From Haliotis rubra (taxonomy: Eukaryota), in contig NW_025765514.1 of the NCBI RefSeq assembly GCF_003918875.1, positions 682,001 to 746,000 of the forward strand: DNA of 64,000 nt. The letters are read 5' to 3'. A program made the position numbers and the translations under genes. Of the stretch, positions 6,390 to 29,226 are shown in pieces. The notes below the pieces were generated by a model. It did not search any database. It was not told the DNA's origin and worked only from the letters and a program-made list of their open reading frames with translations. The first letter of the stretch is position 1, and each line of letters opens with the position of its first letter.

Positions 6390-7065
6390 CCGTGTTCTAT
6401 GTGTCTGTCAACTGTAGGTCCTATGTGTCTGTCTACTGTAGGCATTGTCATATGTGTCTCCTCTACTGTAGGTAGTGTCTGTGTCTGAAGTCTACTGTAG
6501 GTGTCCTATGTCTTTGTCTACTGTGTATTCTCCCCATGTCTACTGTAGGTGTGTCTGTCTACTAGGTAGTGTAGTCTACTGTAGGTAGTGTCCTATGTGT
6601 GTCTGTCTACTGTACTGGTAGTGTCCTATGTGTCTGTCTACTGTAGGTAGTGTCCTATGTGTCTGTCTACTGTAGGTAGTGTCCTATGTGTCTGTCTACT
6701 GTAGGTAGTGTCCTATGTGTCTGTCTACTGTAGGTAGTGTCCTATGTGTCTGTCTACTGTAGGTAGTGTCCTATGTGTCTGTCTACTGTAGGTAGTGTCC
6801 TATGTGTCTGTCTACTGTAGGTAGTGTCCTATGTGTCTGTCTACTGTAGGTAGTGTCCTATGTGTCTGTCTACTGTAGGTAGTGTCCTATGTGTCTGTCT
6901 ACTGTGTGGTAGTGTCCTATGTGTCTGTCTACTGTAGGGTAGTGTCCTATGTGTCTGTCTACTGTAGTGTAGTGTCCTATGTGTCTGTCTACTGTATGTA
7001 GTGTCCTATGTGTCTGTCTACTGTAGGTAGTGTCCTATGTGTTTGTCTACTGGAAGTAGTGTCCG
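6390..7065. repeat. 29-bp minisatellite, about 22 copies
   Basis: Unit tgtctactgtaggtagtgtcctatgtgtc; homogeneous centre, degenerate left edge. Confidence 0.95.
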
Positions 7066-7319
7066 ATTTGAGTGTCGACCCTAAGTTCCTTATGGCGTCA
7101 CAAGGCAAAACCAGTTGTGTTGATAGACTTGGATATACCTCCTGGACAACCTGTTTTCTTTGATCAAATATACACTGCTGATGATCTCTATGGATCAAAG
7201 ATACATTAGTGGTTCATAGTACATGATAAGCATACCCTGTAATATATTCTACTTTATGTGGTACATTTTCAATACTGAACCATACAATAGTGGTATATAC
7301 GACAGGGAAGCACTTACAT

Positions 7320-8157
7320 CAATCACAACCCCAAAGTGAAGACCTACAACAATCACGCACCCCAAGGATAAGACCCACAAGAATCACGCACCCGAAAGGA
7401 TAAGACCAACAACAATCACGCACCCCAAGGATAAGACCAACAAGAATCACGCACCCCAAGGATAAGACCCACAAGAATCACGCACCCCAAGGATAAGACC
7501 TACAACAATCACGCACCCCAAGGTTAAGACCTACAAGAATCACGCACCCCAAGGTTAAGACCTACAACAATCACACACCCCAAGGTTAAGACCTACAACA
7601 ATCACACACCCCAAGGATAAGACCTACAAGAATCATGCATCCCAAGGATAAGTCCTACAAGAATCACACACCCCAAGGATAAGACAACAATCACGCACCC
7701 CAAATAATACAACAATCACGCACCCCAAGGATAAGAACCACAACAATCACGCATCCCAAGGATAAGACCTACAACAATCACGCACCCCAAGGATAAGACC
7801 TACAAGAATCACTCACCCCAAGGATAAGACCTACAACAATCACGCATCCCAAGGATAAGAACCACAAGAATCACGCATCCCAAGGATAAGAACCACAAGA
7901 ATCACGCACCCCAAGGATAAGACCTACAACAATCACGCACCCCAAGGATAAGACCTACAAGAATCACGCACCCTAAGGTTAAGACCTACAACAATCACGC
8001 ATCCCAAGGATAAGACCTACAAGAATCACACATCCCAAGGATAAGACCTACAAGAATCACGCACCCCAAGGTTAAGACCTACAACAATCACACACCCCAA
8101 GGATAAGACCTACAAGAATCATGCACCCCAAGGATAAGACCTACAACAATCACGCAT
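7320..8157. repeat. 31-bp minisatellite, about 27 copies
   Basis: Unit aatcacgcaccccaaggataagacctacaa(c/g). Confidence 0.95.
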
Positions 8158-8325
8158 CGCGATGATCAGGAGAACACGAATCTTGCAATCCCTCCTCCTA
8201 ATGACCAAACCCGCATCAATTACACTGACGAACGACACATGACGGAAGCTAGTAGTCATGGACGACCTGATATTGTTCAAGTTTCCTGCTAGTAACTACA
8301 ACCGGAAGTGCCATGTCTAGACCTT

Positions 8326-8339
8326 CCACGAGGGGGCGC
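8326..8339 (+). promoter_or_regulatory. Candidate CTCF-binding site, with an adjacent ETS site at 8301-8309
   Basis: CCACGAGGGGGCGC closely matches the CTCF core consensus; ACCGGAAGT about 25 bp upstream. Confidence 0.45.
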
Positions 8340-8679
8340 AATTTCAATGATGAAAATAGACAACACAGAGCAGATGGTTACACCTGGCATGCTATGTTCA
8401 GGTTTCTATGAGAACAGATCGAGTACAGGAACGAACGGAGCTCACTCAAATCTGGTTTTGGTTTCTCTTTTCAATAATTTAACTGGAAAACAGATGCATC
8501 CATATGAAAAACTGCAAATACGACCTGAGATGATATTAGTCGAATATAGCATCTGGGAAACTGTCGGGTTCATAGGGAGTGTCATTTGCCTACACTAACG
8601 TCTTGTGACATTATCATTGTGCCATCTTAGGTTCAGAACCTCCTTCTTTGTTTCATTTTAAGTAGAAAGAAGTTTCATC

Positions 8680-11295
8680 GTCTCACCTAGGGCCTAGGGC
8701 TTGTGTCACTGTCTCCAGCTTGTGTGGCTGTCTCTCCTGAGGTCTTCAGCTTGTGTGATTGTCTGACCTGGGGTCTACAACTTGTGTGATTGTCTCACCT
8801 GAGGTCTACAGCTTGACTGATTTTTCTCACCTGGGGTCTACAGTGTGTGTGATTGTCTCACCTGAGGTCTACAGTTTGTGTGATTGTCTCATCTGAGATC
8901 TACAACTTGTGTGACTGTCTCACCTGGGTCTACAGCTTGAGTGATTGTCTCACCTGGGGTCTACAGCTTGATGGATTGTCTCACCTGGGGTCTACAGCGT
9001 GTGTGATTGGCTCGCCTGAGATCTACAACTTGTGTAACTGTCTCACTTGAGATCTACAGCTTGTGTAATTGTCTCACCTGATGTCTACATTATCATTTTG
9101 CCATCTTAAATTTAGAACCTGTTTCATTGTCTTATCTAATGCCTAGGGCTTGTGTCACTGGCTCAGTATGGATCTGGAGATTGTGTGATTATCTCATATT
9201 AGATTTGGAGCTCGCGTTATTGTCTCGCCTGAGGCCTACAGCTTGTCTCATCTGAGATCTACAGCTTGTGGGATTGTCTCATCTGATTTTTACAGCTTGC
9301 GTGATTGTCTCGCCTGAGGCCTACAGTTTGTGTGACTGCCTCACGTGAGGTCTACAGCTTGTGTGGATTGTCTCGACTGACGCCTAGTTTGTGTGATTGT
9401 CTCACCTGAGATCTACAGCTTGTGTGATTGTCTCACATGGGGTCTACAGCTTCTGTGAATGTCTCACCTGAGATCTACAGCTTGTGTGATTGTCTCATCT
9501 GAGGCCTACAGTTTGTGTGATTATCTCATCCGAGGTCTACAGCTTGTGTGCTTGTCTCACCTGAAGCCTACAGTTTGAGTGATTGCTGACCTGAGGTCTA
9601 CAGCACCTCCGAGGACGCCTCACAGTCTACAGCTTGAGTGATTGTCTCACCTGAGGTCTAGCAGCTCATGAGTGATTGTCTCATCCAGAGGTCTACAGCT
9701 ACAGCTTGGTGTGCATTGTCTCACCTGAGGCCTACAGCTTGAGTGATTATCTCATTTGCTTGAGTGATTGTCTCACCTGAGGTCTACAGCAGCTTGAGGT
9801 CTACAGCTTGAGTGATTGTCTCATCCGAGGTCTACAGTCTCATTGTGAGTGATTGTCTCACCTCCGAGGTCTCACAGCTTGATTGTGTGATTGTCTCACC
9901 TGATTGGCTCACCTGAAGTCTACAGCTTGAGTTATTGTCTCATCCGAGGTCTACAGCTTGATGATTGTCTCATCATCTGAGTGATTGTCTCACCTGAGGT
10001 CTACACAGCTTGAATGATTGTCTCACCTGAGCTTGAGTGATTGTCTCATCTCTACACAGCTTGAGGAGTGATTATCTCATCCAGCTTGTGTGGTCTACAG
10101 CAGTTTGTGATTATCTCATGTGCTTGTGTGCTTGTCTCACCTGACGCCTACAGTTTGTGTGATTGTCTCACCTGAGGTCTACAGCTTGAGTGATTGTCTC
10201 ATCCGAGGTCTACAGCTTGTCTCATTGTCTCATCCGAGGTCTACAGCTTGAGTGATTGTCTCACCTGAGGTCTACAGCTTGAGTGATTGTCTCATCCGAG
10301 GTCTACAGTTTGTGTGATTGTCTCACCTGAGGTCTACAGCTTGAGTGATTGTCTCACCTGAGGCCTACAGCTTGAGTGATTCTCTCATCTGAGGTCTACA
10401 GCTTGAATGATTGTCTCACCTGAGGTCTACAGCTTGAGTGATTATCTCATCCGAGGTCTACAGCTTGAGTGATTGTCTCACCTGAGGTCTACAGCTTGTG
10501 TGATTGTCTCACCTGAGGTCTACAGCTTGAGTGATTGTCTCATCCGAGGTCTACAGCTTGAATGATTGTCTCACCTGAGGTCTACAGCTTGTGTGATTGT
10601 CTCATCCAAGGCCTACATCTTGAGTGATTGTCTCACCTGAGGACTACAACTTGAGTGATTGTCTCATCCGAGGTCTACAGCTTGTGTGATTGTCTCACCT
10701 GAGGTCTACAGCTTGATTGATTGTCTCACCTGAGGTCTACAGCTTGAGTGATTGTCTCATCTGAGGTCTACAGCTTGAGTGATTGTCTCACCTGAGGTCT
10801 ACAGCTCAGTGATTGTCCCATCCGAGGTCTACAGCTTGTGTGATTGTCTCACCTGAGGGTGTACAGCTTGTGTGATTGTCTCACCTGAGATCTACAGCTT
10901 GTGTGTGATTGTCTCATCCGAGGTCTACAGCTTGATTGATTGTCTCATCCTGAGGTCTACAGCTTGAGTGATTGTCTCACCTGAGATCAACAGCTTGTGT
11001 GATTGTCTCCATCCGAGGTCTACAGCAGCTTGAGTGATTGTCTCCACCTGCGGTCTACAGTTTGAGTGATTGTCTCACTTGAGGTCTACAGCTTGGAGTG
11101 ATTGTCTCATCCTGAGGTCTACAGCTTGAGAGTGATTGTCTCCATCTGAGGTCTACAACTTGAGTGATTGTCTCACCTGAGGTTGTCTACAGCTTGCTTG
11201 AGTGATTGTCTCACCTGAGGTCTACAGCTTGAGTGATTGTCTCACCTGAGGTCTACAGCTTGAGTGATTGTCTCATCCGAGGTTTTGAACTTGTG
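8680..11295. repeat. 31-bp minisatellite, roughly 80 copies
   Basis: Unit gattgtctca(cct/tcc)gaggtctacagcttg(a/t)gt; scrambled stretch at about 9600-10140. Confidence 0.95.
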
Positions 11296-11979
11296 TGTTT
11301 GTTTCATCACATATATCTTATCATCAAATCGCCATTTATGTCTCGTGTCCTTGTCCAATCAGACTTTTCCAATGCGTGTGGCATTTCATTTTATGATCGA
11401 ATATGACTCAGTCACGTTGTTTTCAAGTTGTAACTGTGGCAATAATACTTAACATTGTGTTTTTGTTGTTCTTGTTATTTCATCTCCAAATGCCAAATAC
11501 AGTACTCAAGTGGGCTGGACAACATCGCGTGATAACAGACACGCAGTTAGGTGAAAGACAAGGTCATTTGTTGATACACTGACTTCTTCGCGTGTTATGG
11601 ACTTGTCGGAATATATGTAAAAGGAAGCTTTACTATGTTGACCTTTCTGACGTATTTGGTGGTTTTTCATTGTATGTTACGGAAATGTATATCGTCAGGT
11701 GTTTTTCTGTAATTTGAGTATCCAGTTATGTTTGTCAAGTTTTCAAAACACGACGGTTTTTAGTGATCTCATTACAATAGCATGCCCCATTATCCAGTGT
11801 TTCAGACTTTTTAAAAAAAAAATTAAAATCCCCGAAGATTACGTGTGTGCATGTATGTGGGGGGAACGCTCTAACCCACACATAAGCGCTCTCTGACAGG
11901 AATGTGTGGGGACAGTTTAGACTTACTGTCGATATCCCCCATAGCATCCGACGCTCATGCCTACCACTTTATACATCGA

Positions 11980-12588: not shown

Positions 12589-13559
12589 CATTGTGTTGAA
12601 TATGAATCCAGCAGGCGTGCAGAATACTTTGTCATCAATATTAGCGTGCAGTTACAGAATATATGATAGTGGCTAGGATGATTACACAATGCCATTTAGA
12701 AAGAGGTCAAATGCAACATATGTTATATTTGGGATTACACTTTCTCAGTAAAGTACAAATTCTAGTACAAAAATGGAAGTCGGCTAGGATGGTACGCCAT
12801 CTGTTCTGTAGATTGAAGAATATTTTAAGAAATTTTAAAAATGTCCATGTTAAGGAAAGTCTTGACAACTGATTTGACCAAACAGTTACAAACGTTATGT
12901 TATATTTGGGATCACACTTTCTCAGTCATGTTACAAACGCTAGTGCTTTCAATTACAAACGTTCTCAAGACGCTACTAGAATGAAAAGAGTCGCCGAAAC
13001 AGTACACACTAATGCCCGTATCAACGACAACGCCATCGACAAGGCATTTCTTGTTATATTTTCACGAATAATTAACATTGGTGTATACTTTCTGTTACCC
13101 TGCAATTTATTTAAAATAAAAAAACCTCATAAAGTCCAGCATCTTAACATTTGTTAAGTTAAATGTGTTCTTAACATAATATATAGAGAGACAATAGTCT
13201 GTGACGTACTATTAACTCTAATATTTATTTTGTCAGTGATTTTTAGATTGCGTTTTTTCGTCTTTTTTTCCACGTTACTGAAATATATCCTGTTCCTTTA
13301 GAGGCCTTTGAAAGACATAGCCCGTATATATTTCAAGCACATCTGTATTTGTACTTGTGACCAGAATAACCTTAAAAGAAAGAACCACGGGGTGATAAAT
13401 GAAACACTGGAAGAAACTGCAAACATCACAAGTGGAGGTAATGGAACAGTTTGTTCCTCGTGCATCTTCAGAGGATACTATTTCTTGACGGACTGGGTGT
13501 GTTTCTAGGGTCGACGTTAAGGTGACCTTGACCCTAACTCGGTTGCTACCAGTAAGACA

Positions 13560-14900
13560 GGATATGCTCTGTTGTTCCGCGGTCTTGCTCTACGTGAAAT
13601 GCCCTGTTATTACATGAACATGTTCTGTTGTCTCGCACACATGCTCTGTTGTTTCAATACATGCTGTTGTTTCAATACATGATCTGTTGTTTTGCGGACA
13701 TGCTCTGTTGTTTCGTGAACATGCTCTGTTGTTTCGCATACATGAGATGTTCTTATTTCGTGGACGTGTTCTGTTGTTTCGTGGACATGTTCTGTCGTCC
13801 CGCGGACATGCTCTGTTGTCTCGGGAGACATAAGGTCCAGCATCTTAACATTTGTTAAGTTAAATGTGTTCTTAACATAATATATAGAGAGACAATAGTC
13901 TGTGACGTACTATTAACTCTGAGATTTATTTTGTCAGTGATTTTTAGATTGCGTGTTATGTTGTTACGTGGACATGCTCTGTTGTTTCGTGGACATGCTC
14001 TGTTGTTTCGCGGACATCCTTTGTTGTCTCGCAGACATGTTCTGTTGTTTCGTGGACATGCTATGTTGTTTCGCATACATCCTCTGTTGTTTCGTGGACA
14101 TGTGTTGTTTCGATGACGTTATGTTGTTACGTGGACACGTTCTGTTGTTTCGTGGTCATGCTCTGTTGTTTTGCATACATCCTCTGTTGTTTCGTGGACA
14201 TGTTGTGTTGTTACGTTGACGTTATATGCTATTACCTGGACATGCTCTGTTGTTTCGTGGGCATGTTATGTTGTTTCGCGGACATCCTCTGTTGTTTCGC
14301 AGACATGTTCTGTTGTTTCGTGGACATGCTCTGTTGTTTCGTGGACATGCTCTGTTGTTTCGTGGACATGCTCTGTTGTTTCGCGGACATCCTTTGTTGT
14401 TTCGCAGACATGTTCTGTTGTTTCGTGGACATGCTATGTTGTTTCGTGGACATCCTTTGTTGTCTCGCAGACATGTTCTGTTGTTTCGTGGACATGCTAT
14501 GTTGTTTCGTGGACATGTGTTGTTTCGATGACGTTATGTAGTTACGTGGACACGTTCTGTTGTTTCGTGGTCATGCTCTGTTGTTTTGCATACATCCTCT
14601 GTTGTTTCGTGGACATGTTGTGTTGTTACGTTGACGTTATGCTATTACCTGGACATGCTCTGTTGTTTCGTGGGCATGTTATTTTGTTTTGCGGACATGC
14701 TCTGCTTTTTCGCGGACATGTTCTGTGGTTTCGTGGACATGGTTTGTTGTTTCGCGGACATGTTCTGTGGTTTCGTGGACATGGTTTGTTGTTTCGCGGA
14801 CATGTTCTGTGGTTTCGTGGACATGGTTTGTTGTGGACATGTTCTGTTGTTTCGTGGACATGGTTTGTTGTTTCGCGGACATACTCTGTTGTTTCGCGAA
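13560..14900. repeat. 21-bp minisatellite with higher-order structure
   Basis: Unit ggacatgctctgttgtttcgt; variant block at 14095-14270 recurs at 14510-14680; interrupted by a 126-bp copy of flanking DNA (13829-13954). Confidence 0.95.
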
Positions 14901-15669
14901 CGCCAAGTGTCATCCTTCTGAAGCAATCCACGAGTGTGATTATGTTGTTGACTTTCATTTTTATTTTATTATACATTTTCATCGTGAATCTGATTTAGGA
15001 AACGCGCGAATCTGAATATAACCTTGGCCAAAGAAGCATTCACTGATGTTTACTGGGGCCTGAAACATAAGGAACTCTTATTCGATGGTGCTGTTTTAGA
15101 TAATGGGGTCACGTTTTGGACATGAAGTTTGCTGCTCTTCGGCAAGTGTTTCCAGCCTGGTAAGGTTTTCATAACATATTAAGTTTGCGTTGAAATCCTA
15201 GAAATGTATATTTCTTTTTGCCCTGCAGCTCCTGAAATCGATTTTTTCTTCTTGAACCTTTTTCACTGTTCCATAGTGACGCGATGCCTTCCGCCAGAGA
15301 TCAGTACGATAAGGGCAACAGACAGCACATAACTTACTTCGACAGTATCTTATCCGGTGACTTGGCATTTTCTCTTGTGGCTGAGTCTTTCGTGAAAACA
15401 GTCTAATTTATCAGGTGAAATCGACATCTGTTTATTTTAATGAGCTAGATACCTTCTATGTCGTGAAATAAATGGAAAACAGCAGGAGTAAGCATGCTGA
15501 TTAGTATTATCTATCAGTTTTAAAATGTAACATGAACTCACAGTGAAGATTGAAGGTATGTACTTGTGGTTAAGTCTCCTCCAAATCTCGGTGTAATATA
15601 TCACATTGGATACTCACTGGGTTTTACACTCCTCTTCAACGTGATTTCAGTGCACGCAAAACAACACTG

Positions 15670-15742
15670 GTGAGTGAGTGAGTGAGTGAGTGAGTGTGAG
15701 TGAATGAGTGAATGAGTGAGTGAGTGAGTGAGTGAGTGAGTA
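15670..15742. repeat. (GAGT)n microsatellite
   Basis: Direct reading; same motif as the SINE tails. Confidence 0.9.
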
Positions 15743-16763
15743 AGCCAGAGAGTGAGTCTCCCACAATGAAATTGTTTGGCTGTGTTGAATCTTTGAACAT
15801 TGTTTTATAAAAATACATAAACCCGCTATGATTTGTTTGTTGTTTGTACGATGTTCTTCAGTTAATACATTATCAAATAACCAGATTATTTATACATACA
15901 TATGTATAACACAGGTTTAGACACTGGCGCTAGCCCGTAAAGATCTACTCACGATTTTGGAGAGATAATTATCTACCCAGACTGAATTAATTTCCGAGCC
16001 ATGGCGACGGACTCTCAACATTATTTCAAGAGAAGCAGGCAAACAGCAATTCCGAGTTACGAGTAGGTCGTTTGATAGACTTTTTTCTTTGATAACGGAG
16101 GTAGATGCGCCGCGAGAGACGAGCACAATCGATCTGTTATAGAACAGAGTTACATGAAACATTACTGTGAGACCATGAACAATGGGTGACGTCATCAATT
16201 TGTGACGTAACAGGGTTATGGACGTATGTGCGAACATGAGTAATATCTGAATAATTGGACACAAATTAATTCACATGAAACAGAGGTGGTAATGTTGAAT
16301 GAGAATTACTGAAACTATTGCAACAATATATTGGACTCTGTTGGTATTATTAGTCAGATTGTACCACTTGACATATAATGTATTCAGTATCCATGAAAGA
16401 TGTGTATTGTATTTAACAAATTCAGATGCATTTAATTATTTGTTTTTTAAATGTATATTCACAATTTCCAGACAACAGATCTTCGCCATGACGGTGGCGC
16501 CTATCTTAATCAATGACATCTGCATTTGCATATGATGGGTTCAGTTCCAGATTTGCAAGTTTTAACCCAAAGGAAGCATTGAGATAGCCCAGTGGTCACC
16601 GTGTTCGCTCGTAGCGCCCAAGATCCGGATATCCAGCTGGGTATAAGCCCTGCCTGTGTGACCCACGTGGTATGTTGTGAAACCTCACTCAATACCGTAT
16701 TTTCTCGATTAATGATTAAGGGTATAAACTCCTTACATGCTTTATCACCACGTTTAACAAAAC

Positions 16764-16935
16764 ATGAAGATCCGGGTTAAAATTGGTCGTAGGAGGCGAC
16801 TAACATCGTATCCTAATTTCGCAGATCGATGCCCATGTTGTTGATCACTGGATTGCTTGGTCCAGACTCGCTTATTTACAGACCGCCGCCATATAGCTGG
16901 AATATTGCTGAGTACGGCGTTAAACAACAAACAAG
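16764..16935 (+). mobile_element. SINE family B, internally deleted
   Basis: tgaagatccgggtt...ggtccagactcgcttatttacagaccgccgccatatagctggaatattgctgag. Confidence 0.85.
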
Positions 16936-19602
16936 ACGAAAATAACCCTCAAAACAAAAGAAAAACCCACGTTTTACGGAGGCATTATGGTTATTATAAT
17001 TTCCCACGATGAATTCGCTCAGATTCTGTAGTTGAAAATTTCTCTGAACTATTTTGTGTACGCATACTGAAGTCGAAACAATGCTGTGTGCGGTATGAAA
17101 CCGCAATATTTTATTTATTTGTCTACCCGACGTTTCATCGAGACCCAGATCTCATTGAATTTAGATACCTCGTACGCAGGCGTTTTATCTTGGCCCAGCG
17201 TTTCATTCAGGAAATACGGTATCTATTGAAGCTGTGTGTTTACTCCCAGAACACAAGAGAGGCATAGCTGCAGTGTAAGGCAAGGCGGTTGATGGTGAAA
17301 ACATCTACTGCACAACATCAAAGGAATAATTTAATACAACAATTTCTTAAGAATTACATGAGTAGCACAGCAACATGAGCCGAGACTCAAAGCGGGTTGA
17401 TGTAACACTCTTACAGCTAATAGTCGATATCTGATACAACGGTAGCTCATTATGAACAACCACGATGTATGTGATAGATCGAATGTCGTTATACCATCAG
17501 TTCATACGTGGCCTCAAACAAATCTCATACTTTACGTTTGTTGCAGATCTCAGTGGCAATTATGATATTGAATACTTTACACTGAACTATCTGGACTACA
17601 TGTCCATACACTATTAATACTTCACATTTTCTTGAGCACAGGACAACCCAATAAGGATGCCATGGCCAAAATGGATGTTATGACCAGGTAATAAGTTCAG
17701 TCAGCTGGAGGGACCACCGGCAGTTCAGACATCTTATGATCTTTAATTCGTTGTGGAGAACCACGTCGTTAAGAGATGTCTGAAACCTATAATGCGGGTT
17801 CGAATCTCGGATTAGGTTTCTAGGTCTGTCATCACCAAGCCGAGCTCAGGGGTTTCACCAAGATGGTTTAACTTCGGGTTTAATCGGGTTTAAAGTGTAA
17901 TCCCAAATATAACATATATATGTTAAACACAACTCAATCATCACTCATTCAGCTGATCTGATTGGATTAAAATATGCCAGCCGAATTTCAGGATTTAGCT
18001 GGCCGCCATAAGATAAATAGTTTCCTCCATGGCGAAAACCCCAAGTAACTCCTCTTACAACCAACGTTCTTCTCTATGATAGGACGAGTTTTAGTTCCTT
18101 TTTAATGGTTAAAGCTTGTTAAAACTATTAATTCAACTCCTGCTCAGCGCATGTTGTGAGATGTACAGTCTTCACACACTGTTCCGCCTGTACAGCTCGA
18201 ACAGCGTACCGTTAAGCTTGAAAAGAACATATTAATAATACACGGAGAACCAGGAAGTTCGTGAGCACAAGACGAGACAATAATATACGTTTTACAAATA
18301 TATTCTAAAGATCCTGCGCAGCATTTTTAATGCAACTACAATGTTGACTCCAAGCTGGAAATTATATAAAACTCTCGGATAATGATAAAATATAAATGTG
18401 CTTGAAACGAAGTGAGCTTCTATCTGTAGACTCTGCACACCGCCCTTAACATGGTGCACGTGTAACAGTGACGTCATTACAGAGTGGGAGAATGGATTGC
18501 TTGGATACATGTAAACATGTAAACATGGCGGCCGCCGTGATACTATCTGTGAAGACACATATTGAACGTGTAGCTCTGTTGTCGTGACGTCATCTTAACT
18601 CGTCCTGACAAGGTTTTGACGATAACTTAATGACACGTGATGCGGTTGACCAGGAAATTGCTCTATTATTGAATTACATGTTTCACGCAATCTTTGTTCT
18701 GTAATGGATTACTTGTACTTAAAGTGACGGGGATAACGAGATAATTACACGGTCATTATCTTTATAATGACGTTATAATGACGTTTACGTTTGTTGGTTC
18801 CATCGTTTGGGGTAGAACATTTACTGCCTGATACCATGATGAACTAGCCTTACTTAACTATGGTCTGTAGCATGCTTGAGTGCGTGAGTGAATGAATGTT
18901 GTTCAATGCCGCAGTCAGTGAGTGAGTGAGTGAGATAGAATTTAACGTCACCTTGGCAATAATTCAGCCATATAGTGACGAGCCGCAGTCAGTAATATTC
19001 TAGCTTTTAACCCAGGCAACGAACTGAATACAGAAACCATACCAATGGCTGAAAGACAGAGCAACGGGATATGTCCTTGGGATGACAGAGCCACACGTTG
19101 GGGCGAGGGAGTGTGTGCGTGTGTGCGCGTGTGTGTGCGTGTGCGGGTGGGTTTGAGAAGAGATGATCGCCTACTTGCTATCATATTGTTACAAGGCTGA
19201 AAACTGTCGCCGAAACTCTACCAGCTCAATGTTTAAACACAGCTAGGACACTCGTATCAAATACATCATTATCGGATAACCGTTTCTTGTTTCATCCATG
19301 TTTGATGATGGCTAAACATGGAAGTGGACTTCCTGTTGACTGACAGTTTATCAGTAACGATCGAGACAAAAATACATTGGTGTTACATCTGCATTAAACA
19401 GGATCACCCACGCCATGAAAGTTGCAGTAACCTAATAAGGTCAGCTGTGAGAATAGTTCAAATCTGTTTCAGATATTATTGTACATATGAACTTTTTACC
19501 TGCAGACATTTTTCTGCCACTGATGTATTAGTCGCCCCAAACTGGGGGATTCCAGTACAAATGTACCGCTAATTGATGATGACTCAGTCATTACTAAAAA
19601 AA

Positions 19603-19709
19603 GGTCCCGATCCACAAAGCGTTCGTAGCGCTACGACATACGTAAGCCTATGGTAAACTATAGAGTTACGACAGGTCGTAACGTTACGAACGCTTCGTGG
19701 ATCGGGACC
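19603..19709. mobile_element. 107-bp MITE related to the CWG-target family
   Basis: TIR GGTCCCGATCCAC / GTGGATCGGGACC, followed by CAG. Confidence 0.75.
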
Positions 19710-19832
19710 CAGGACTCACACACGTATCTGTGTTAACCATTATTCAGCACAATCCACCGCCTTCAACATTTGATGAGAAATTGAATTGTCTGGACCAGAC
19801 CAAAATATACACAGACTGGCATCATAAAGCTG

Positions 19833-19939
19833 GGCCCCGTTTCACAAAGCGATCGTAGCGCTAAGATGATCGTAAACCCCATATTTTAACATAGACTTAT
19901 GATTGTCGTAGCGCTACGATCGTTTTGAGGAACGGGGCT
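19833..19939. mobile_element. 107-bp Harbinger-like MITE inserted into an old SINE B tail
   Basis: About 30-bp imperfect TIRs; CTG duplicated (19830-19832, 19940-19942), splitting the SINE consensus agCTGgaatattgc. Confidence 0.85.
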
Positions 19940-22810
19940 CTGGAATATTGCTAATTGCTACAACAAACAACCACGTAATAGGTGCTGGGAGCAAAACCAA
20001 CCAAAAATATCCTCGGTCCTGTAAAGTTGCCTACGATACCATTACGACACATCATATGTACTAGAAGTCCGTTTGTCAGGAAAACCAAGCCGCGCTGTAA
20101 CAGGTTGACCCTGGTCAGTGTCGGGTCACTGTATTCCTGGACTATCTATCAGCAGGATCATTGTGTCCGTCATTATCATGTTCACTTACACGCTTGGCGG
20201 CCAAGCTACTTCCTGCCTCCTCTGGGTGTCAGATGGGGTATGATGAATTGGTCCATTACAGAAATACAATGGCTGGGTCTCACTTTCAGAGAATGGAGTG
20301 TAGAATCTTGGTGACTGATACACCCAACTACACGGACTTCATATCGTTTTACTGTATGTTGTGTGTGCTATATATGTAGACAGATTTGACCCTGGTGTTG
20401 TTTACAGCTGTCATGTGGCTACAGACACTGATATCATTGCTGGTACCGGACCTGAACTGGCTAAACCTGTTGCCAGCGTGTACAGAGATTCCATCAGAGA
20501 CTCTCCTGTCAGGGTCTGACTGATTACCTGGTTGATTCCACCCGACACTATCATCTGTAAGTCTCTGCACATGACGCACGAGTGGTCCAGATGTATGACG
20601 GGTCACGGGTTGTCTCCCCTAGTCATGCCAGAATCCGATGATTCTTATTCAAATCTAGATTCATCAACTTTCGAAACACACGTAGTTTAGTATCGTCTTA
20701 AGAAGCTGGAATTACTAACGTCACTCGGCTGTTGGATCTTATATGCAAAAGATATTAGTATTAGACTTTTATATATCTTTGGCTCTCTTGTATGAGGTAA
20801 AAATAATTTGACATATTTTGCTTTCATAAGTGGATGTTCAAAATCAGTTGAACATTACATATATCACTTAACACTCCTAGTGTTCTTGACCTTTTGATGA
20901 TGAAGAATGTATTGCCATTTCAACACTGCAAATGAACATTTAGAATTTTTTTGTCCGATTTAACGTCTTAGCATTTGAAAATGAAGCGAATCCCGTCTGC
21001 AGAAACTGGATGATTGATGGATTGTCCTCATCCATGTTAGTGCAGAGGAAGTCAATCTCCTCTCCGGGAGTTGGGCCGAAGCTTATGTTTCTCCTTGCAG
21101 TGTAGGTGCTAACTTCTCTATGTTCCTTCACAATATGCTAGCTGTCTCTTGCCTTGCTCCCCACATCCCATGGCCCTGCATGGTATTCGTCTTAAATCTT
21201 AAAACGTTCGAATTCGTGGACCTTAATCCTCAGCCATGGCATCCTGTCGAGCAGGATATTGGGAGCCTGATGATGGCGATAAGCCGGCGGACGACCCGTG
21301 GGTTGGGGCTCTGCCATCTAGATGTCGATGTGGTGCTGTACACGAGGCCCACTTGGGTTGGGGCCATCGAGGGAAACTTAAACTTAAGTCGGGATATTGC
21401 GGTGCTGTTAACACACTCGGTGTCTGATTGAAGAGCAACGCTGTTCTTACAAATCGATATATTTTGTCTGTATGACTAGTTTGCTTTAAACTTAAAAATG
21501 TTCGCGTATTTAATGTCAGATGAATATTAACTGTCAGACTAAAGAAAATATAAGCTTATGTTTCGTGGAGACTAAAAATTAATCAAACGCGAAATGGTGA
21601 GTCATAAATGTATTTGATAGTTATCATAGACTTCTGTCATCCTTACAACGTTTTAATAACGTTTGTAACTGTTGACAAATGTAGAAGAAAAGGCTCGTTT
21701 GCCATCCAACCCCTACAGGATAGAATGGACAGATTTTAAAGGGTATTTTAAATTAATTAATTTTTCAGAGTGGGCAGGTTTATTTAGCGCGTCAATATAG
21801 CCAGCAATTTCACTGATTCTGGAGCTGAACAACATTTACTTCCACGTACACAAATATGGTGTAGGAAGAAATATGTATCTCGAGTTCACCAAGATGTCAT
21901 GTAACAGATGTTCTACTCAAAACCAAAAAATAACAACAATGGAACGGGCAAACTACAAATAATAATGAACATTCAAATGAAACCAATCATTGCAACCCCC
22001 GCAGCGATATTGTTGGAATATTGCTGTAAGCGGCGTCGCTCACTTTAATTAGTTAGCCCATTACAGAACAAAGATGGCGTGAAACATTTAATTCAATAAT
22101 AGAGCAATTTCCTGGTCAACCGCGTCTCGTGTCATCAGGTTATCGACAAAACTTTGTCAGCACGAGTTAACATGACGTCACGACAACAGAGCTACACGTT
22201 CAACATGTTTCTTCACAGATAGTATCACGGCGGCCGCCATGTTTACATGTATCCCAGCAATCCATTCTGCCACTCTATAATGACGTCATTGCTACACGTG
22301 CATCATGTTAGGGGCGGTGTGCAGAGTCTACAGATACAAGCTCACTTCGTTGAAGTACATTCATATTTCATCATTATCAAATAGTTTAATGTCTAGGTTA
22401 GAGTCAACATATTTGTAACACGTATGTTGTGATCTAGTCTCTGTCGGTTATTAACATCTTCATTTCAAGCTAAACAAAAACCGCTGCAGTGAGCTGTCAA
22501 GAGCTGTAGAAGCCAACCAGCAGACTGTCAGTATACATGCCTCCATGAGAAGACCCTGGGGCTTACATGACACTTTAACGGCGCACAATGAGTTGCATTC
22601 ATAATTGATAGGTTAAGCATTGTCAGTTATTCTAAAAGGATATATATACTTTTTATAGTGGACGAGAATCTTTAGAAGATGTAGAGGAAGTGAGTTAGTG
22701 CTTCGTGCATCATGAGAGCTATTCTATAATGGCGGTCTGGTTGTACTTCGACTAACATTTAGCCGCACAAATATCTTCACCTTAAAGCACCAAATTAAGT
22801 CAAATCCCAA

Positions 22811-23038
22811 TGGTTGGTTGGTTTGTAGTATAACGCCGCTCAGTAATATTCCGGTTACATGGCGGCACTCTGTATATAATCAAATCTAGTGATCAACAGC
22901 ATGAGCATCGATCTACGCAATTGGGATACGATGACATGTATCAACCAAGTCAGCGATCCTGACCACCCGATCCCGTTAGTCGCCTCTTACGACAAGCATG
23001 GGTTGCTGAAAGCCAATTCTAACCCTGATCTTCGCGGG
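22811..23038 (-). mobile_element. SINE family B
   Basis: Reverse complement begins cccgcgaagatcagggttagaa, ends in an (AACC)n tail. Confidence 0.85.
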
Positions 23039-24577
23039 TAAATCTAACTAAACTAACAAAGCGAGCTGAGACAATCTGGACTTAATCTTGATTATGTTCT
23101 TGGTTCAGGGAGACAAACTAAAACTAAAACTGGCGTTAAGCATGTTCAGTGTTCAACGGGTTCGCTCGTCGCGTCGTAACACGGGTTGGATGCATGGAGC
23201 CCATTTCTTGTATGTCATTGCTGGAATATATGTCGCGTGTAAAACAATGCTCACTCTCAGAGACAAACATGATGGGATGGATTCAGTATATTCTCCAGGG
23301 TGTGCGTTGTTTATAACAAATTCTTGGTCAGTCAGAGTTTGACAAGTGGTCAAGGTTGTTACATAAAGATATTATAATTTTTATGTTGTTAAAATATTTC
23401 ATTGAATGAAGTTTTGTTTTATTTATATATGAACATTCTGTATAAATTCATGTGGTATTTCCAATCCAGTTAGCCCAGCTGACAGAGTTGGTTAACCCAA
23501 GTGTGAACAGTATTCCAGTTACAATCACGGCATGACAACTTATATAGGAAGAAATCCGAAGTAATGCATGTCCTCGGCGTACACCACTTACGAAACCAGT
23601 TTGAAACACAATAAGCCCGGGTATGGTGCTGACAAATCTAGAAACATAATCGGTGCGAACCGAGATTCGAACCCATATCTTAGGTTCCAGGTGTGCCGAA
23701 GGGACGCAACTCTGAACGGCAAATTGAAGCCGACTTAGATGACTGGGTCATTTGTTCTCCCTTCCAGCTGAATGGACCTACGTCATGACCCTCATTTCAC
23801 GGGAGGTCGGGGCGTTTTGTGTTCAAGACCATGCTGCATGTGATATGTTACTTATGGGCCTGGATATAACAGCAGCAAAAGTTCTATTTGCAATGAATAC
23901 AGCGTTATCCGAAATATTTTCACGTTTGTCCATTACCTGAGAGGCATTTAGTACGGACTTAACAGTAGCCATAACAAGTTCAATGAAAAGAATTCCGTAT
24001 TACGCGTGCCACTTGGAACTGAGACCTGCAAAACATTAAGTTTGGGATCTTAATCAAGCCATGTATTTTGGTGTTAAAATTACCACTCGTACGACATTCG
24101 ATCTATCATGTAAACAGAATTGAGGAAGTGGTCTCGAGGCTCTGATATCGACTATTTGCTGTAAGAGTGTTACATAAACCGCTTTTAGACTTAGAGAAAG
24201 GCTCATGTTTGAATGCTACTGCATGTAATTCTTAACAAACTGTTGTATTTAATTCTTCCTTTGATGTTTTGTAGTAGTAGATGTGTTTGTCGTGCCTTGC
24301 GAAACATTGGGGCTTCGCCTCTCTTTTATTCTAATAGTAAACATACGGCTCAAGGACACACCGTATTTCCTCGTTGAAACGATAGCACGCGCCTGGACTG
24401 GATGAAACGCCGGTAGTTACATACAAAGGAATGAAATATGTGCATATACAACACATTGTCCCCGCTACACTGAAGCATTTAGGGAACATTTGAACCAAAT
24501 AGGGGTCTGAAGGAACCATAAACATAATAATGACAAAAACCGGGCCCCGAGCTCAGTTAAATAGAGGAAATACAATA

Positions 24578-24727
24578 GTGAGTGTGGTTTGGCAACGTCC
24601 TATGTCATTTTAGCGATGTGGGACGCAAAGGTTGATGAGATTCCAACATGCATCCATGTGGAGACTCGAAACTGGTACTTCGGCGTGACGAGCGAACACT
24701 CCAACCACGGGGCTACCTCACCACCCC
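24578..24727 (-). mobile_element. Old SINE family A copy, mirrored at about 16578-16690 (+)
   Basis: Degenerate A-box/B-box head at the equivalent position in both arms of the inversion. Confidence 0.6.
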
Positions 24728-25524
24728 ACTTCACACTTAAGGTCAAAACAGAAGCGTAAATGGTTTGATGTGCGAACTAGACGTGGAACTTGATTTGTAA
24801 AACCCAAATATTTGAAAAACACAGCAACTTGTGATATCTCAAATAGGAATCTTTCATGGATAATGATTGTAACGTATAGAGAGCGGTAAGGTTTGGCGTA
24901 AGTTCTCCAGAGGGACAAAGATACCGTTGCAATTAGCTTCAGTAATTCTTATTGGACATTGTAACCATTGCCTCACGTGGAACGGTTTCCAAATAGGTCA
25001 ATGTTACGTCAGTCATATAAACGGATTGTCGTAAATGATTATCGATGACGTCACTCATTGTTCGTGGCCTCACAATCCGTTTTAAGCAGCATTGTTACGG
25101 TAAAACTGGATCACATGAGCTCATGTCTTCAACGGTGCTCCAGAACCAATCCTCTCTTCGATATGTCAGAAAAAGGCCATGTCTTATATCACAACTAGTA
25201 ACTGGGAATTGCGGATTATCTCCCCTTCCTGAATAATGAAGAAAGTTGCCAAGGTCGTGAAATTAATTCAGTCAGGGTACAAAATTATTTCCCTAAGCTC
25301 GTGAGTGTTTTTTTACAGATTAACGCCAGTGTTTAATTAAGCCTGTATCATAGGCATCAGACAAGTGAGTATTTAATACTATTTTCACAACACATGACCA
25401 GCTTACAATGCACAAATCCCACTTTCTTGTCTATTCACAATGTTCAATGTTTTCACAGTCAAATGATCGTCATGGGGGAAAGCTCTATCACCCAATGACT
25501 CACTCACGAATCACTTTCTCAATA

Positions 25525-25690
25525 GGGGCGGTGGGGTAGCCCAGCGGTTAAGGCGTTCGTTCGTCGCGCCGAAGACTCGGGTTCGATTCCCCACATGAGT
25601 ACAATGTGTGTAGCCCATTTCTGGTGTTCCCCGCCGTAATATTGCTGGAATATTGCTGAAGGCGGCGCAAAACTAAACTCACTCACTCAC
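25525..25690 (+). mobile_element. SINE family A, full length
   Basis: tRNA-like head, (TCAC)n tail, TSD tcactttctcaatag. Confidence 0.95.
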
Positions 25691-25764
25691 TTTCTCAATA
25701 GCTCACCACCTAACCAACCTACTTACTAACCCACTCATTTTACAATCACACGTAACACTTATAG

Positions 25765-26116
25765 GTGAGGTGAAATTGGGTTTTAACGTCGTGCTTGAGA
25801 ATATTTCGCTCATATGACGACGTGCATGCGTGTGTATGTGTATGTGCGGCTGCTTGTACTAGCCCAGACTGAAGCTGGTTTTATAGTGCTAGCCCACTGA
25901 GATACCATGCCGCAGTGAAGCATGAATACCCCACTCAGACACATTATACTGACTCCGAGCCGACCAGTCCTTGTTGTACCCATTAATGCCGAGCGCCAGG
26001 CAGGGACCAACAAGTACCATATTTTAACGTCTTTTGGTATGACGCGGTCGGGGATCGAACCCTCGACCTTCCGCTCTCCGGGTCGGCGCTCTAACCACTA
26101 CACCACGGAGGCGGTC
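25765..26116 (-). mobile_element. tRNA-derived SINE with a Meta-type central domain (family C)
   Basis: Minus-strand head gtggtgtagtggttagagcg...ggttcgatcccc, then gtcataccaaaagacgttaaaatatggtac...cctgcctggcgctcggcattaa, resembling the MetaSINE domain as I recall it. Confidence 0.75.
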
Positions 26117-27477
26117 CTCACTTGTGACAGTCGTTCTACCGCTTTTGAAAACATTGAAGATATTCGGCTCTTCAAATTGACTGGTTATCTCGACGTAAAT
26201 TTAAACAACAATTCCTGCGTGTCTCAGACTCAAGAGTAAATGTCACGTGACTGGACAAGACAATGTCAGTGTAAGCTATATGATCTATGTAACCTTATCG
26301 CACTAATCTCAGGCAGACGTCATGACGTCCCGGTGGAAGCCTCAAATCAGCTTAAGCAGTTCTATTTACACGAGTGACACATTGATTTCATTAACTGTCG
26401 GGCTAAAAAAAACCTTTACACTTGAAAATTGGATCTTACCGAACAATCACAAACTTTATCAAACCGTCACTCGGCTGAAAACATTCCACGAAACAACGTT
26501 GGAAACGTTGGTCCAAAACATACAGACCTATATAAAACCACATCACCATCTTTGGTCTTTCGTTTATAACCTCGATCAGACATTGGTGCATATTTCCCTT
26601 TTGCCTGTTGGTCCGTCATCAGGTTTTGCACGTTCTTACGCCTTCGTGACTGTTTGGCAAAGACGATAACGTCCAATAAAAAAGTGAAAGTGACATTCTC
26701 AACTTGCACTGATAAATCATTATAGAAATAGACGGATTACGAAACAATAGATCATGTCAAAGTCAGACCTAACTGGTTGCAGCTGAGTTGAGGTTAACTG
26801 ACATTAGAGACGTTTTACACACGCCAAAAAGTAATATCCTCTGAAGATGCACGGGGAACAAACTGTTCCATTTCCTCCACTTGTGATGTTTGAGGTTACT
26901 TCCAGTGTTTGTTTATCACCCCGTGGTTCTTTCTTTCAAGGTTATTCTGGTTACAAGTACAAATATAGATGTGCTTGAAATATATACGGGCTATGTCTTT
27001 CAAAGGTCTCTGAAGAAAATGGATATATTTCAGTACCTGAGGCTAAAACATGAAATGAGGCAAGCAAAGACTCAAAGACAGAATTAATCTCAGAGTAAAT
27101 AAACAGTCCTAACAGACTCCCTTCTACAGATATATTTATAACTCATTTTAATAACCGAATGCATTAGATGATGGATTTGAAAAATATATTTGAAAATTGT
27201 AAATACATTGTGGTTTTTACACATTTGTAATATGATGGAGACACACGTGCAGTCGTTGGTTTGCTAGGATATTATTATAAGGATCGAAAAACAATATTCA
27301 TTCACGACCTCATGGTTTACTTGTTTTAAAACAGGGGTTGCTGGTTAGCCTGATAGTTAGATAGTCCGCTCGTCTCTAAATGGACAGACAACGTGGTCGG
27401 CATCAAACACGTTCATTGTGTTTCTGCCACTCCCGTACACATGTAATAGAACCCCCGAATCTCCCCTCGTGAAACAG

Positions 27478-28250: not shown

Positions 28251-29226
28251 ATGTAACGGTTTATAATTTCTCCTTAATTTGAAAACAGTTAGTTTTGTCA
28301 GTTTTACGTCTTCAGAATTTATTCATAATGGCCTTTAATTAAACTCCAGGCACAGCAACAGCAACAATAGTGAGATGTCGCCATAATTGTTTGAACTATC
28401 TCACATTAGCTATTTTATGTCATTTTATGACCAATTTGTATCTCTACTGCACTGCACGAGGAAGTTGTAGCAGGAAGTCTGTTTACAATGTTCTTTCAGA
28501 ATTTTACTTCCCGTAACACAAGTAATATTGACAAAAATATCAACATTCACATGTAGGCAAGACTATCTCTTCCCTTGAGAAACATAATGACACGGCGACG
28601 GGGATATGGAACTCGCCGCGTGATCTGCAGGTGCTCTGTTATAACTGTTCTGGGTGTGTTAGATGTTGAAGTTTTAAGAGAGTCTTCTACTTAAAACCCG
28701 CGTTAACATCCGAGATTTCATGCGTCATATGTATGTATTCAGTTTTATGAGAGTAAAAGTTGATGTAATGGAGTTTACATTTTTAGTGGTTCGCCCTCGT
28801 GTTACGTCACGAACAGCTGGCGAAACCAATAAAATGACGTCATTGGTAAGATATATGTGGCTGGAATCAATCAACGAAACATATGTGTCATATTTAAGCT
28901 GAGCTTTACGTAAACAAACGCTAATGTAACGAATGAGGCCAAGCCTTCAATGTAATCATAAATCCACACAACCTACCTGTGACTTATGATAACGCACCGT
29001 GACGCAGTTTGTCAGTTTAACTCAAGACATAAAATGTGAATACTCCTGTTGAACATATGAAGATGAATTTATGGATTTTTTAATACGTCGGGAGGTAATT
29101 CAAAACAGCTTTGGCCTCGGGATATGTTTTTGTGGCAATAAATTCAATGCAATTTGATATATCTGAAAAACTGTGGTCATGACAAATTCATTATTCATAT
29201 TGTTCCGTACTGCCTTATATGTACTA

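What the first reader, a model, noticed from the sequence alone, without database searches (positions are those of the whole stretch)
13128..27180. Hidden 14-kb palindrome: old inverted duplication with no recognisable coding gene
Seen: 13.1-19.0 kb aligns collinearly in reverse complement with 21.8-27.2 kb around a spacer of about 2.8 kb. Most of the arms are heavily diverged (roughly 65-75% with indels, by eye) and have independent SINE and minisatellite insertions. Two blocks stay near-identical, and an old SINE (16.6 kb/24.65 kb) appears to pre-date the event. No protein family is recognisable in either arm. Inference: a duplicated non-coding locus (lncRNA or micropeptide gene pair, or regulatory domain) kept by selection or by local arm-to-arm gene conversion; read-through transcription would yield long fold-back dsRNA.
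Basis: partly seen in the sequence, partly recalled or inferred. Interest (0 to 1): 0.7.

Follow-up and report, generated by a model that had tools for sequence, protein, structure and literature searches.

The report
Old decayed palindrome keeping promoter-like islands
A stretch of non-coding abalone DNA was copied back-to-front beside itself long ago and has mostly decayed. Both copies still keep a short block that looks like a gene switch and a second non-coding block, so it is a real but fairly ordinary genomic fossil whose activity could not be tested here.

Summary
The palindrome is real. Left arm 13103-19351 aligns collinearly, in reverse complement, with right arm 27210-21526 around a spacer of about 2.2 kb. 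Outside two islands the alignable parts are about 70% identical (K2P about 0.38), with arm-specific SINE, MITE and minisatellite insertions and one shared, older SINE.

The two islands are inner 18396-18712 / 22058-22351 and outer 13276-13495 / 26822-27035. They are about 89-92% identical, not near-identical. Each occurs exactly twice in the 1.38-Gb genome, so they are not repeats.

Nothing in the arms is coding, matches Rfam, or folds unusually well. The inner island is an exceptional cluster of transcription-factor motifs: two CRE sites, an E-box, an ETS site and a YY1/strict-initiator-like GCCGCCATGTT. No 317-bp window in 200 kb of background genome matches it. I read it as a promoter-like module.

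Whether selection or old arm-to-arm gene conversion kept the islands alike is unresolved. Long fold-back dsRNA is not supported: only six perfect runs of 21 nt or more exist, all inside the islands.

The scan has already noted similar old inverted duplications on other DNA of this genome.

The parts
13103..19351 (.). Left arm of the inverted duplication
   Evidence: Collinear inverted HSP chain with 27210-21526. Its unique parts match only the partner arm in the whole genome.
21526..27210 (.). Right arm of the inverted duplication
   Evidence: Same chain.
19352..21525 (.). Unique spacer. It carries two copies of a high-copy MITE-like element of about 110 bp at 19603-19716 and 19832-19943.
   Evidence: The own-genome search finds only the self match apart from the roughly 110-bp element, which has at least 40 copies at 93-97%. 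No Pfam hit for its ORFs.
18396..18712 (.). Inner island, left copy: promoter-like motif cluster. TGACGTCA at 18469 and 18585, CACGTG at 18457 and 18634, AACATGGCGGC at 18522 (GCCGCCATGTT on the minus strand), CAGGAAAT at 18651.
   Evidence: 92% identical to the right copy. Two copies in the genome. Motif counts against background. 10 of 12 match to the sINR consensus GSCGCCATYTTG (PMC2715227).
22058..22351 (.). Inner island, right copy. Same motifs, except that the second E-box is lost and 8 bp are absent.
13276..13495 (.). Outer island, left copy: AT-rich non-coding block with splice-acceptor-like sites on both strands (plus strand AG at 13300, minus strand AG at 13372).
   Evidence: 89% identical to the right copy, with a 1-bp indel. 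Two copies in the genome. Splice-like sites.
26822..27035 (.). Outer island, right copy
16160..16200 (.). Small island around a third conserved GTGACGTCATC site. Its partner is at 25040-25080.
17305..17434 (.). Two short islands (17305-17360 at 89%, 17395-17434 at 93%). Partners are at 24141-24277.
16554..16665 (+). tRNA-derived SINE head shared by both arms (partner 24635-24730), older than the duplication
13618..14896 (.). 21-bp minisatellite found only in the left arm. The right arm keeps the unexpanded seed near 26740-26780.
25763..26118 (.). Young high-copy 355-bp element inserted only in the right arm
   Evidence: At least 39 other copies at 97-98% identity.
22811..23040 (.). Interspersed repeat found only in the right arm. 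The same family sits at 16804-16935 in the left arm, at a non-homologous position.

Best explanation
This is an ancient local inverted duplication of roughly 4.7 kb of unique, non-coding, CpG-undepleted (probably unmethylated) DNA in an abalone genome. The assembly statistics match Haliotis rubra.

Since the duplication the arms have drifted to about 70% identity and have taken up separate SINE, MITE and minisatellite insertions. What stands out is a pair of islands kept at about 90%.

The inner island is a promoter-like cis-regulatory module. It has a YY1/strict-initiator-like GCCGCCATGTT core flanked by two full CRE palindromes, an E-box and an ETS site. The outer island is a non-coding block with exon-like edges.

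I infer that the duplicated segment carried a regulatory element, and possibly a short non-coding first or last exon. I also infer that both copies stayed alike through purifying selection on that element, probably helped by gene conversion starting at an open, promoter-like site while the arms were still similar.

Shown here: the structure, the two-copy status, the absence of coding or structured-RNA signal, and the motif cluster. Inferred: promoter activity, direction of transcription, and the cause of the conservation.
For: - Structure.
- Both islands are two-copy, and so are the unique parts of the arms.
- The islands are about 4.5-fold less diverged than the rest (JC 0.083 against 0.375, P = 8e-29).
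- Motif cluster: in 200 kb of random genome the expected counts per 317 bp are 0.017 for TGACGTCA, 0.013 for ATGGCGGC, 0.07 for CACGTG and 0.035 for the ETS pattern. None of 4002 background windows holds two or more CRE sites, or CRE plus ATGGCGGC plus E-box.
- Five of the six motif cores are intact in both copies.
- A third CRE is kept in both arms inside a low-identity stretch.
- GCCGCCATGTTT matches 10 of 12 positions of the sINR consensus, which sits at transcription start sites of TATA-less human promoters.
- The arms have CpG o/e of 0.89-0.96, which places them in the high (unmethylated) class of a bimodal genome.
Against: - There is no transcript evidence of any kind. No RNA run was listed.
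- The islands' CpG o/e (1.05-1.1) is no higher than that of the surrounding arms.
- Differences are spread evenly within the islands. Their sparing of the motif cores is not significant (about 1 observed against 3.8 expected, my Poisson estimate P about 0.1).
- Indel events per substitution are the same in the islands (0.115) as elsewhere (0.099). Both islands also have similar divergence (0.086 and 0.118). This is what a simple 'age reset' by gene conversion would give.
- Splice-like signals exist on both strands, so no transcript model is favoured.
- No downstream coding exon was found within 35 kb.
Confidence: 0.5

Rival explanations
1. Gene conversion alone. The islands are the last tracts exchanged between the arms before divergence stopped recombination. 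They have no present function, and the motif cluster is a relic or a coincidence.
For: - The two islands have similar divergence (0.086 against 0.118), and the smaller islands lie near 0.08-0.11.
- The indel-to-substitution ratio equals the neutral ratio.
- Differences are spread evenly through the islands. The longest perfect runs of 25-40 nt are about what uniform 8-10% divergence gives.
- There is no coding or RNA-structure constraint.
- Arm-to-arm conversion is the rule in palindromes (abstracts of PMC8327919 and PMC8981503).
- Earlier notes of this scan report conversion patches in other inverted duplications of this genome (not checked here).
Against: - One of only two large islands coincides exactly with a motif cluster that none of 4002 background windows matches. 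If tracts fell at random, the chance of that is about the 11% of the alignable arm that the islands cover.
- GC content is not consistently raised (inner 43-45%, outer 38-39%, arms 40-41%), so no trace of GC-biased conversion is seen.
- Two tracts 5 kb apart would have to stop converting at about the same time.
Confidence: 0.3
2. Hairpin-RNA or endo-siRNA locus. Read-through transcription folds the arms, or at least the inner islands, into dsRNA that is diced. Complementarity between the arms is the selected trait.
For: If 18.4-22.4 kb were one transcript, the inner islands could form an imperfect duplex of about 288 bp (-505 kcal/mol). Helices of up to 44 bp (inner islands) and 78 bp (outer islands) form if G:U pairs are allowed.
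Against: - Outside the islands the arms are too diverged. All six perfect runs of 21 nt or more lie in the islands.
- Transitions show no bias towards G:U-compatible changes (8 against 5 in the inner island).
- No other place in the genome resembles the islands, so no target gene of the kind that hpRNA loci derive from is found.
- The loops would be 3.3 and 13.3 kb.
- No RNA data are available.
Confidence: 0.06
3. A pair of protein-coding or micropeptide genes whose exons are the islands.
For: A 20-codon ORF (MAAAVILSVK...) starting at the ATG of the YY1-like motif, in a good Kozak context, is open in both copies. The plus-strand acceptor at 13300 is strong in both copies (8.7 and 10.0 bits).
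Against: - Every longer frame is broken by stops or by the 1-bp and 8-bp indels.
- The differences inspected in the 20-codon ORF (2 of 2) and in the open frame of the outer block are non-synonymous.
- No Pfam hit.
- A word search with the 88-aa ORF found nothing.
Confidence: 0.04

Closest known systems
Large sex-chromosome palindromes of mammals, maintained by arm-to-arm gene conversion (PMC8327919, PMC8981503)
   Same: Two inverted arms around a unique spacer. Exchange between arms is a plausible cause of local high identity.
   Different: Those arms are over 10 kb, more than 99% identical and carry testis-expressed gene families. Here the arms are about 6 kb, about 70% identical and gene-free, and only about 0.5 kb stays near 90%. 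Conversion, if it ever acted, stopped long ago.
Duplicated conserved non-coding elements kept in both copies of an old duplication (vertebrate dCNEs; from my own knowledge, not checked here)
   Same: Short islands of high identity in otherwise decayed paralogous non-coding DNA, rich in transcription-factor motifs.
   Different: dCNEs are defined by conservation across species and lie near paralogous developmental genes. Neither could be tested here, and no neighbouring paralogous gene pair was found.
TATA-less promoters with a strict initiator (sINR, GSCGCCATYTTG, bound by YY1; PMC2715227) and upstream CRE or ETS sites
   Same: GCCGCCATGTTT matches 10 of 12 sINR positions. If the minus strand of the left arm is the sense strand, a full CRE lies about 60 bp upstream, an E-box about 107 bp and an ETS site about 125 bp.
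   Different: sINR was defined in human promoters. No start site, transcript or downstream gene is known here, and the motif reads equally well as a downstream YY1 site on the other strand.
Drosophila hairpin-RNA (hpRNA) loci (from my own knowledge, not checked here)
   Same: Inverted repeat that could fold back if transcribed through.
   Different: hpRNA arms are near-perfect over hundreds of bp with short loops, and they resemble a target gene. Here the complementarity is poor outside two islands, the loops are kilobases long and no target-like sequence exists.

Membership tests
Palindrome maintained by ongoing arm-to-arm gene conversion | Arms nearly identical (over 99%) along their length | tested here: not met
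   70% outside the islands and 89-92% inside.
Palindrome maintained by ongoing arm-to-arm gene conversion | Arms of one species more alike than orthologous arms between species (concerted evolution) | not testable with these tools
Palindrome maintained by ongoing arm-to-arm gene conversion | GC enrichment of converted tracts | tested here: inconclusive
   Inner island 43-45% GC, outer island 38-39%, arms 40-41%.
Hairpin-RNA / endo-siRNA locus | Long near-perfect complementarity between the arms | tested here: not met
   Six perfect runs of 21 nt or more in the whole palindrome, all inside the islands.
Hairpin-RNA / endo-siRNA locus | Sequence similarity to a target gene elsewhere in the genome | tested here: not met
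   The islands match only each other in 1.38 Gb. Matches of only 21-25 nt could not be excluded.
Hairpin-RNA / endo-siRNA locus | A transcript through both arms, and small RNAs from them | not testable with these tools
   No RNA run was listed, so read laying could not be used.
RNA polymerase II promoter (sINR/YY1 plus CRE type) | Dense cluster of promoter-proximal factor motifs around an initiator-like core | tested here: met
   Two CRE sites, an E-box, an ETS site and the YY1/sINR-like core within 317 bp. None of 4002 background windows has even part of this.
RNA polymerase II promoter (sINR/YY1 plus CRE type) | Mapped transcription start site or transcript | not testable with these tools
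   No RNA run was listed.
RNA polymerase II promoter (sINR/YY1 plus CRE type) | Local CpG excess relative to surroundings | tested here: inconclusive
   Island CpG o/e is 1.05-1.10, but the whole arms are 0.89-0.96.
Conserved non-coding element kept in duplicate | Paralogous copies significantly more alike than flanking paralogous DNA | tested here: met
   JC 0.083 against 0.375, Fisher P = 8e-29.
Conserved non-coding element kept in duplicate | Conservation in other species | not testable with these tools
   No eukaryotic relatives are in the collections.
Protein-coding or micropeptide gene pair | The same open frame in both copies, with excess synonymous change | tested here: not met
   Only a 20-codon ORF is shared, with 2 non-synonymous and 0 synonymous differences.
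Structured non-coding RNA | Rfam match, or unusually stable and covarying fold | tested here: not met
   No credible Rfam match: nothing at gathering thresholds, and at E up to 1 only snoZ178 at 25 bits against a gathering score of 100, in the (GTGA)n run outside the islands. Fold z-scores are 0.10 and -0.27 (inner), 0.38 and -2.06 (outer, left copy) and -0.86 (outer, right copy). No compensatory pairs.
Interspersed repeat or foldback transposon | Further copies elsewhere in the genome | tested here: not met
   The unique arm segments and both islands match only the partner arm.

The most novel reading that the evidence does not exclude
The two inner islands are active mirror-image promoters kept by selection. 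They would drive either divergent non-coding transcripts through the arms, with the outer islands as exons, or convergent transcripts that overlap in the unique 2-3 kb spacer and give sense-antisense RNA. Either way this would be a regulated (CRE-responsive) paired non-coding RNA or small-RNA locus in a mollusc.
Probability: 0.1. Interest if true: 0.55.

Novelty: new member of a known kind. Interest (0 to 1): 0.3.

Why it matters
By itself this is one more old inverted segmental duplication. The scan has noted several in this abalone genome, so it adds to the evidence that fold-back-type duplication recurs there.

Its one distinctive point is that the decay exposes what has resisted decay. A promoter-like block of about 300 bp and a second block of about 200 bp stand out at roughly 90% against a background of about 70%. 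This gives a ready-made natural experiment for separating selection from gene conversion once other Haliotis genomes and RNA data are laid on it. It also gives a compact candidate CRE-driven regulatory element for reporter tests in a mollusc.

Tried and rejected
- A global MAFFT alignment of the arms mis-aligned the middle because of kilobase indels. I used chained local HSPs instead.
- RNA evidence: the look-up of sequencing runs listed no RNA run, so read laying could not be used.
- A word search with the 88-aa ORF over the inner island found nothing, not even itself. Protein databases therefore cannot stand in for orthologous DNA here.
- An exact 34-nt pattern from the inner island found nothing in metagenome contigs.
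- Rfam gave nothing at gathering thresholds. At E up to 1 it gave only a 25-bit snoZ178 match in the (GTGA)n run, far below that family's 100-bit gathering score.
- RNA folding and alifold of the islands gave no signal except a z-score of -2.06 for one strand of the left outer island, not reproduced in the right copy (-0.86).
- tblastx between the arms showed all frames equally conserved and full of stops.
- Pfam on the larger ORFs found only the unrelated GPCR and ankyrin genes further right.
- CpG o/e as a promoter marker was not discriminating, because the whole 12-30 kb domain is CpG-undepleted.
- The CpG-poor stretch at 6-11 kb looked like a possible methylated gene body. Its extreme, alternating AT and GC skews, and tandem arrays at about 6.6-7.1 kb and 11.0-11.3 kb, suggest low-complexity sequence instead, though it was not examined directly. 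It is single-copy in the genome.
- Scoring of splice sites found conserved candidates on both strands, so it did not fix the orientation.
- An apparent extension of the palindrome through SINE hits at 12.0 and 12.5 kb against 30.2 and 30.0 kb was rejected as repeat matches.
- A foldback-transposon reading was rejected for lack of other copies.
Full report
**Observation**

An inverted-repeat scan of 12.0-28.5 kb returned a collinear series of reverse-complement matches. Sensitive BLAST (word 7, +1/-1) of 12.0-20.5 kb against 20.5-29.0 kb gave ten inverted HSPs in strict order:

| Left arm | Right arm | Note |
|---|---|---|
| 13103-13579 | 27210-26740 | contains the outer island |
| 15084-15468 | 26550-26144 | |
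| 15679-15741 | 25737-25677 | shared (GTGA)n run |
| 15717-16449 | 25521-24798 | |
| 16580-16622 | 24720-24678 | shared SINE |
| 17199-17588 | 24381-23977 | |
| 17692-17857 | 23780-23602 | |
| 18341-18727 | 22410-22040 | contains the inner island |
| 18805-18921 | 21923-21810 | |
| 19255-19351 | 21619-21526 | |

E-values run from 1e-112 to 2e-4. The arms are therefore 13103-19351 and 21526-27210, and the spacer is about 2.2 kb. Nothing but SINE matches continues the symmetry outside these limits. A global MAFFT alignment failed in the middle because of kilobase indels, so all numbers come from the chained local alignments.

**Divergence**

Outside the two islands, 2231 aligned pairs carry 659 substitutions. 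That is 70% identity, JC 0.375 and K2P 0.38. It is a lower bound, because only the better-preserved 46% of the left arm aligns at all.

In 40-column windows identity is bimodal, roughly 45-77% against 85-95%.

- The inner island core (18396-18712) differs at 25 of 309 pairs, plus a 1-bp and an 8-bp indel.
- The outer island core (13276-13495) differs at 24 of 220 pairs, plus a 1-bp indel.

So the blocks are 89-92% identical rather than near-identical. They are still about 4.5-fold less diverged than the rest (Fisher P = 8e-29). Smaller islands lie at 17305-17360 (89%), 17395-17434 (93%) and about 16160-16200.

**What the arms are made of**

The genome has 1,378,282,171 bases in 2855 contigs. 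This matches the published Haliotis rubra assembly almost exactly (1,378,265,264 bp in 2,854 scaffolds; PMC6774278). Earlier notes of this scan also call it abalone.

Both islands occur exactly twice in this genome. The unique stretches of the left arm match nothing but the right arm.

Arm-specific insertions:
- Left arm: a 21-bp minisatellite of about 60 units at 13618-14896. Its seed is single in the right arm.
- Left arm: a 129-bp local copy (13128-13256 repeated at 13829-13957, 97%).
- Left arm: a repeat at 16804-16935.
- Right arm: repeats at 21977-22042, 22811-23040 and 25498-25697.
- Right arm: a young 355-bp element at 25763-26118 whose other copies are 97-98% identical to it.

A tRNA-derived SINE head sits at the homologous position and orientation in both arms (16554-16665 and 24635-24730). 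The spacer is unique apart from two copies of a high-copy element of about 110 bp.

**No coding or structured-RNA signal**

- tblastx between the arms shows every frame equally conserved and interrupted by stops.
- Frame-by-frame translation of both islands shows no frame open in both copies. The 1-bp and 8-bp indels shift the frames.
- The only shared ORF has 20 codons, starts at the ATG of the YY1-like motif, and carries two non-synonymous and no synonymous differences.
- Pfam finds nothing in the larger ORFs of the arms and spacer.
- A word search with the 88-aa ORF over the inner island found nothing.
- Rfam finds nothing at gathering thresholds. At E up to 1 the only match is snoZ178 at 25 bits against a gathering score of 100, in the (GTGA)n run outside the islands.
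- Fold z-scores of the inner island are 0.10 and -0.27. The outer island gives -2.06 on one strand in the left copy but -0.86 in the right copy. The consensus fold has no compensatory pair.

**The inner island is a promoter-like motif cluster**

Within 317 bp it holds:
- two full CRE palindromes (GTGACGTCAT at 18468 and 18584);
- CACGTG at 18457 and 18634;
- CAGGAAAT at 18651;
- AACATGGCGGC at 18522.

All are intact in the right copy except the second E-box.

In 200 kb sampled from twenty other contigs, the expected counts per 317 bp are 0.017, 0.075, 0.035 and 0.013 (for the ATGGCGGC core). None of 4002 background windows holds two CRE sites, or a CRE plus ATGGCGGC plus an E-box.

Read on the other strand, GCCGCCATGTTT matches 10 of 12 positions of the strict initiator GSCGCCATYTTG. 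That element lies at -10 to +5 of TATA-less human promoters and binds YY1 (PMC2715227). On that reading the start site would be near 18527 on the minus strand. A CRE would then lie at about -60, an E-box at about -107 and an ETS site at about -125. A donor-like site conserved in both copies lies at 18440 (6.4 bits in both).

A third GTGACGTCATC is kept in both arms inside an otherwise roughly 65% stretch (16187 / 25046).

The arms have CpG o/e of 0.89-0.96. Across this genome 5-kb windows are bimodal (about 0.3-0.4 and 0.8-1.0), so the locus belongs to the CpG-undepleted class, presumably unmethylated in the germline. The islands do not stand out from the arms in this respect.

**The outer island**

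It is AT-rich and CpG-poor (o/e 0.5) and has no striking motif content. It has strong acceptor-like sites conserved in both copies on both strands:
- plus strand at 13300 (8.7 and 10.0 bits), where conservation starts about 25 nt upstream and runs about 195 nt downstream;
- minus strand at 13372 (9.6 and 9.9 bits).

It could be a non-coding exon on either strand or an enhancer. The sequence alone does not decide this.

**Selection or gene conversion?**

For selection:
- One of the only two large islands coincides exactly with a motif cluster that is essentially unique against background. Randomly placed conversion tracts would do this with a probability of about 11%, the share of the alignable arm covered by islands.
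- The motif cores are kept.
- A third CRE is retained.

For conversion:
- The two islands have statistically indistinguishable divergence (0.086 and 0.118).
- Indel events per substitution are the same in the islands (0.115) as elsewhere (0.099). Under a pure age reset 4.3 events are expected and 5 are seen.
- Differences are spread evenly within the islands.
- GC content gives no verdict.

The two processes are not exclusive. In many organisms recombination starts at open promoters, so an active promoter-like module could both be constrained and attract conversion. That link is inference. I put about 0.5 on a constrained regulatory module (with or without help from conversion), 0.3 on conversion alone, and small weights on the rest.

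**Fold-back dsRNA**

The claim of long fold-back dsRNA does not hold for the arms as a whole. Only six perfect runs of 21 nt or more exist, and all lie in the islands. Cofolding shows that the inner islands could form an imperfect duplex of about 288 bp, and the outer islands one of about 204 bp, if a transcript spanned them. The loops would be 3.3 and 13.3 kb.

Transitions between the copies show no bias towards G:U-compatible changes (8 against 5). No other sequence in the genome resembles the islands, so there is no target gene of the kind seen at hairpin-RNA loci.

**Limits**

The collections hold no eukaryotic relatives, and one metagenome pattern scan found nothing. Transcription, direction, and conservation between species therefore remain untested.

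**Context and verdict**

No coding exon was recognised from 1 to 35 kb. The nearest genes are an ankyrin-repeat ORF at 35279-35839 (minus strand) and a rhodopsin-type GPCR at 43777-44931 (minus strand).

The scan has already reported similar old, decayed, non-coding inverted duplications on other contigs of this genome (s1-352091 and s1-353968). I did not check those.

The feature is a new member of a known kind and is of modest interest.

Noticed in passing
window 1024-1584: Five exact TGACGTCA sites within 560 bp, set in degenerate repeats of the form ATGACGTCAGTACACA. The stretch is interrupted by a high-copy element of about 143 bp at 1250-1391. The window as a whole has 12 TGACGTCA sites, against 1.2 expected from shuffles and about 3.5 from the genome background.
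   Followed up: partly
window 13560-14896 versus 26740-26780: Birth of a minisatellite. The 21-bp unit TGTTGTTTCGTGGACATGCTC is expanded to about 60 copies in the left arm, while the right arm keeps a single unexpanded seed at the homologous place. A 129-bp piece (13128-13256) has been copied at 97% identity into the array at 13829-13957.
   Followed up: partly
window 25763-26118: A very young 355-bp interspersed element. At least 39 other copies in the genome are 97-98% identical to it, which suggests recent or ongoing amplification.
   Followed up: partly
window 19603-19716 and 19832-19943: Two neighbouring copies of an element of about 110 bp that is itself palindromic (it matches on both strands). 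It has at least 40 copies in the genome at 93-97% identity, so it is MITE-like.
   Followed up: partly
window 28800-28850: ACCAATAAAATGACGTCATTGGT: a CRE flanked by a CCAAT box and its inverted copy, 1.6 kb outside the right arm. It looks promoter-like.
   Followed up: no
window 6000-11300: A CpG-poor stretch (o/e 0.16-0.5) with extreme, alternating AT and GC skews, including 58-bp and 31-bp tandem arrays. It is single-copy in the genome.
   Followed up: partly
window 35279-35839 (-) and 43777-44931 (-): Two intact single-exon ORFs: a 186-aa ankyrin-repeat protein and a 384-aa rhodopsin-family GPCR (Pfam 7tm_1, E = 1.5e-32).
   Followed up: partly
genome-wide (L005-L024): CpG o/e of 5-kb windows is clearly bimodal (about 0.3-0.4 and 0.8-1.0), as expected for mosaic DNA methylation in a mollusc.
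   Followed up: partly
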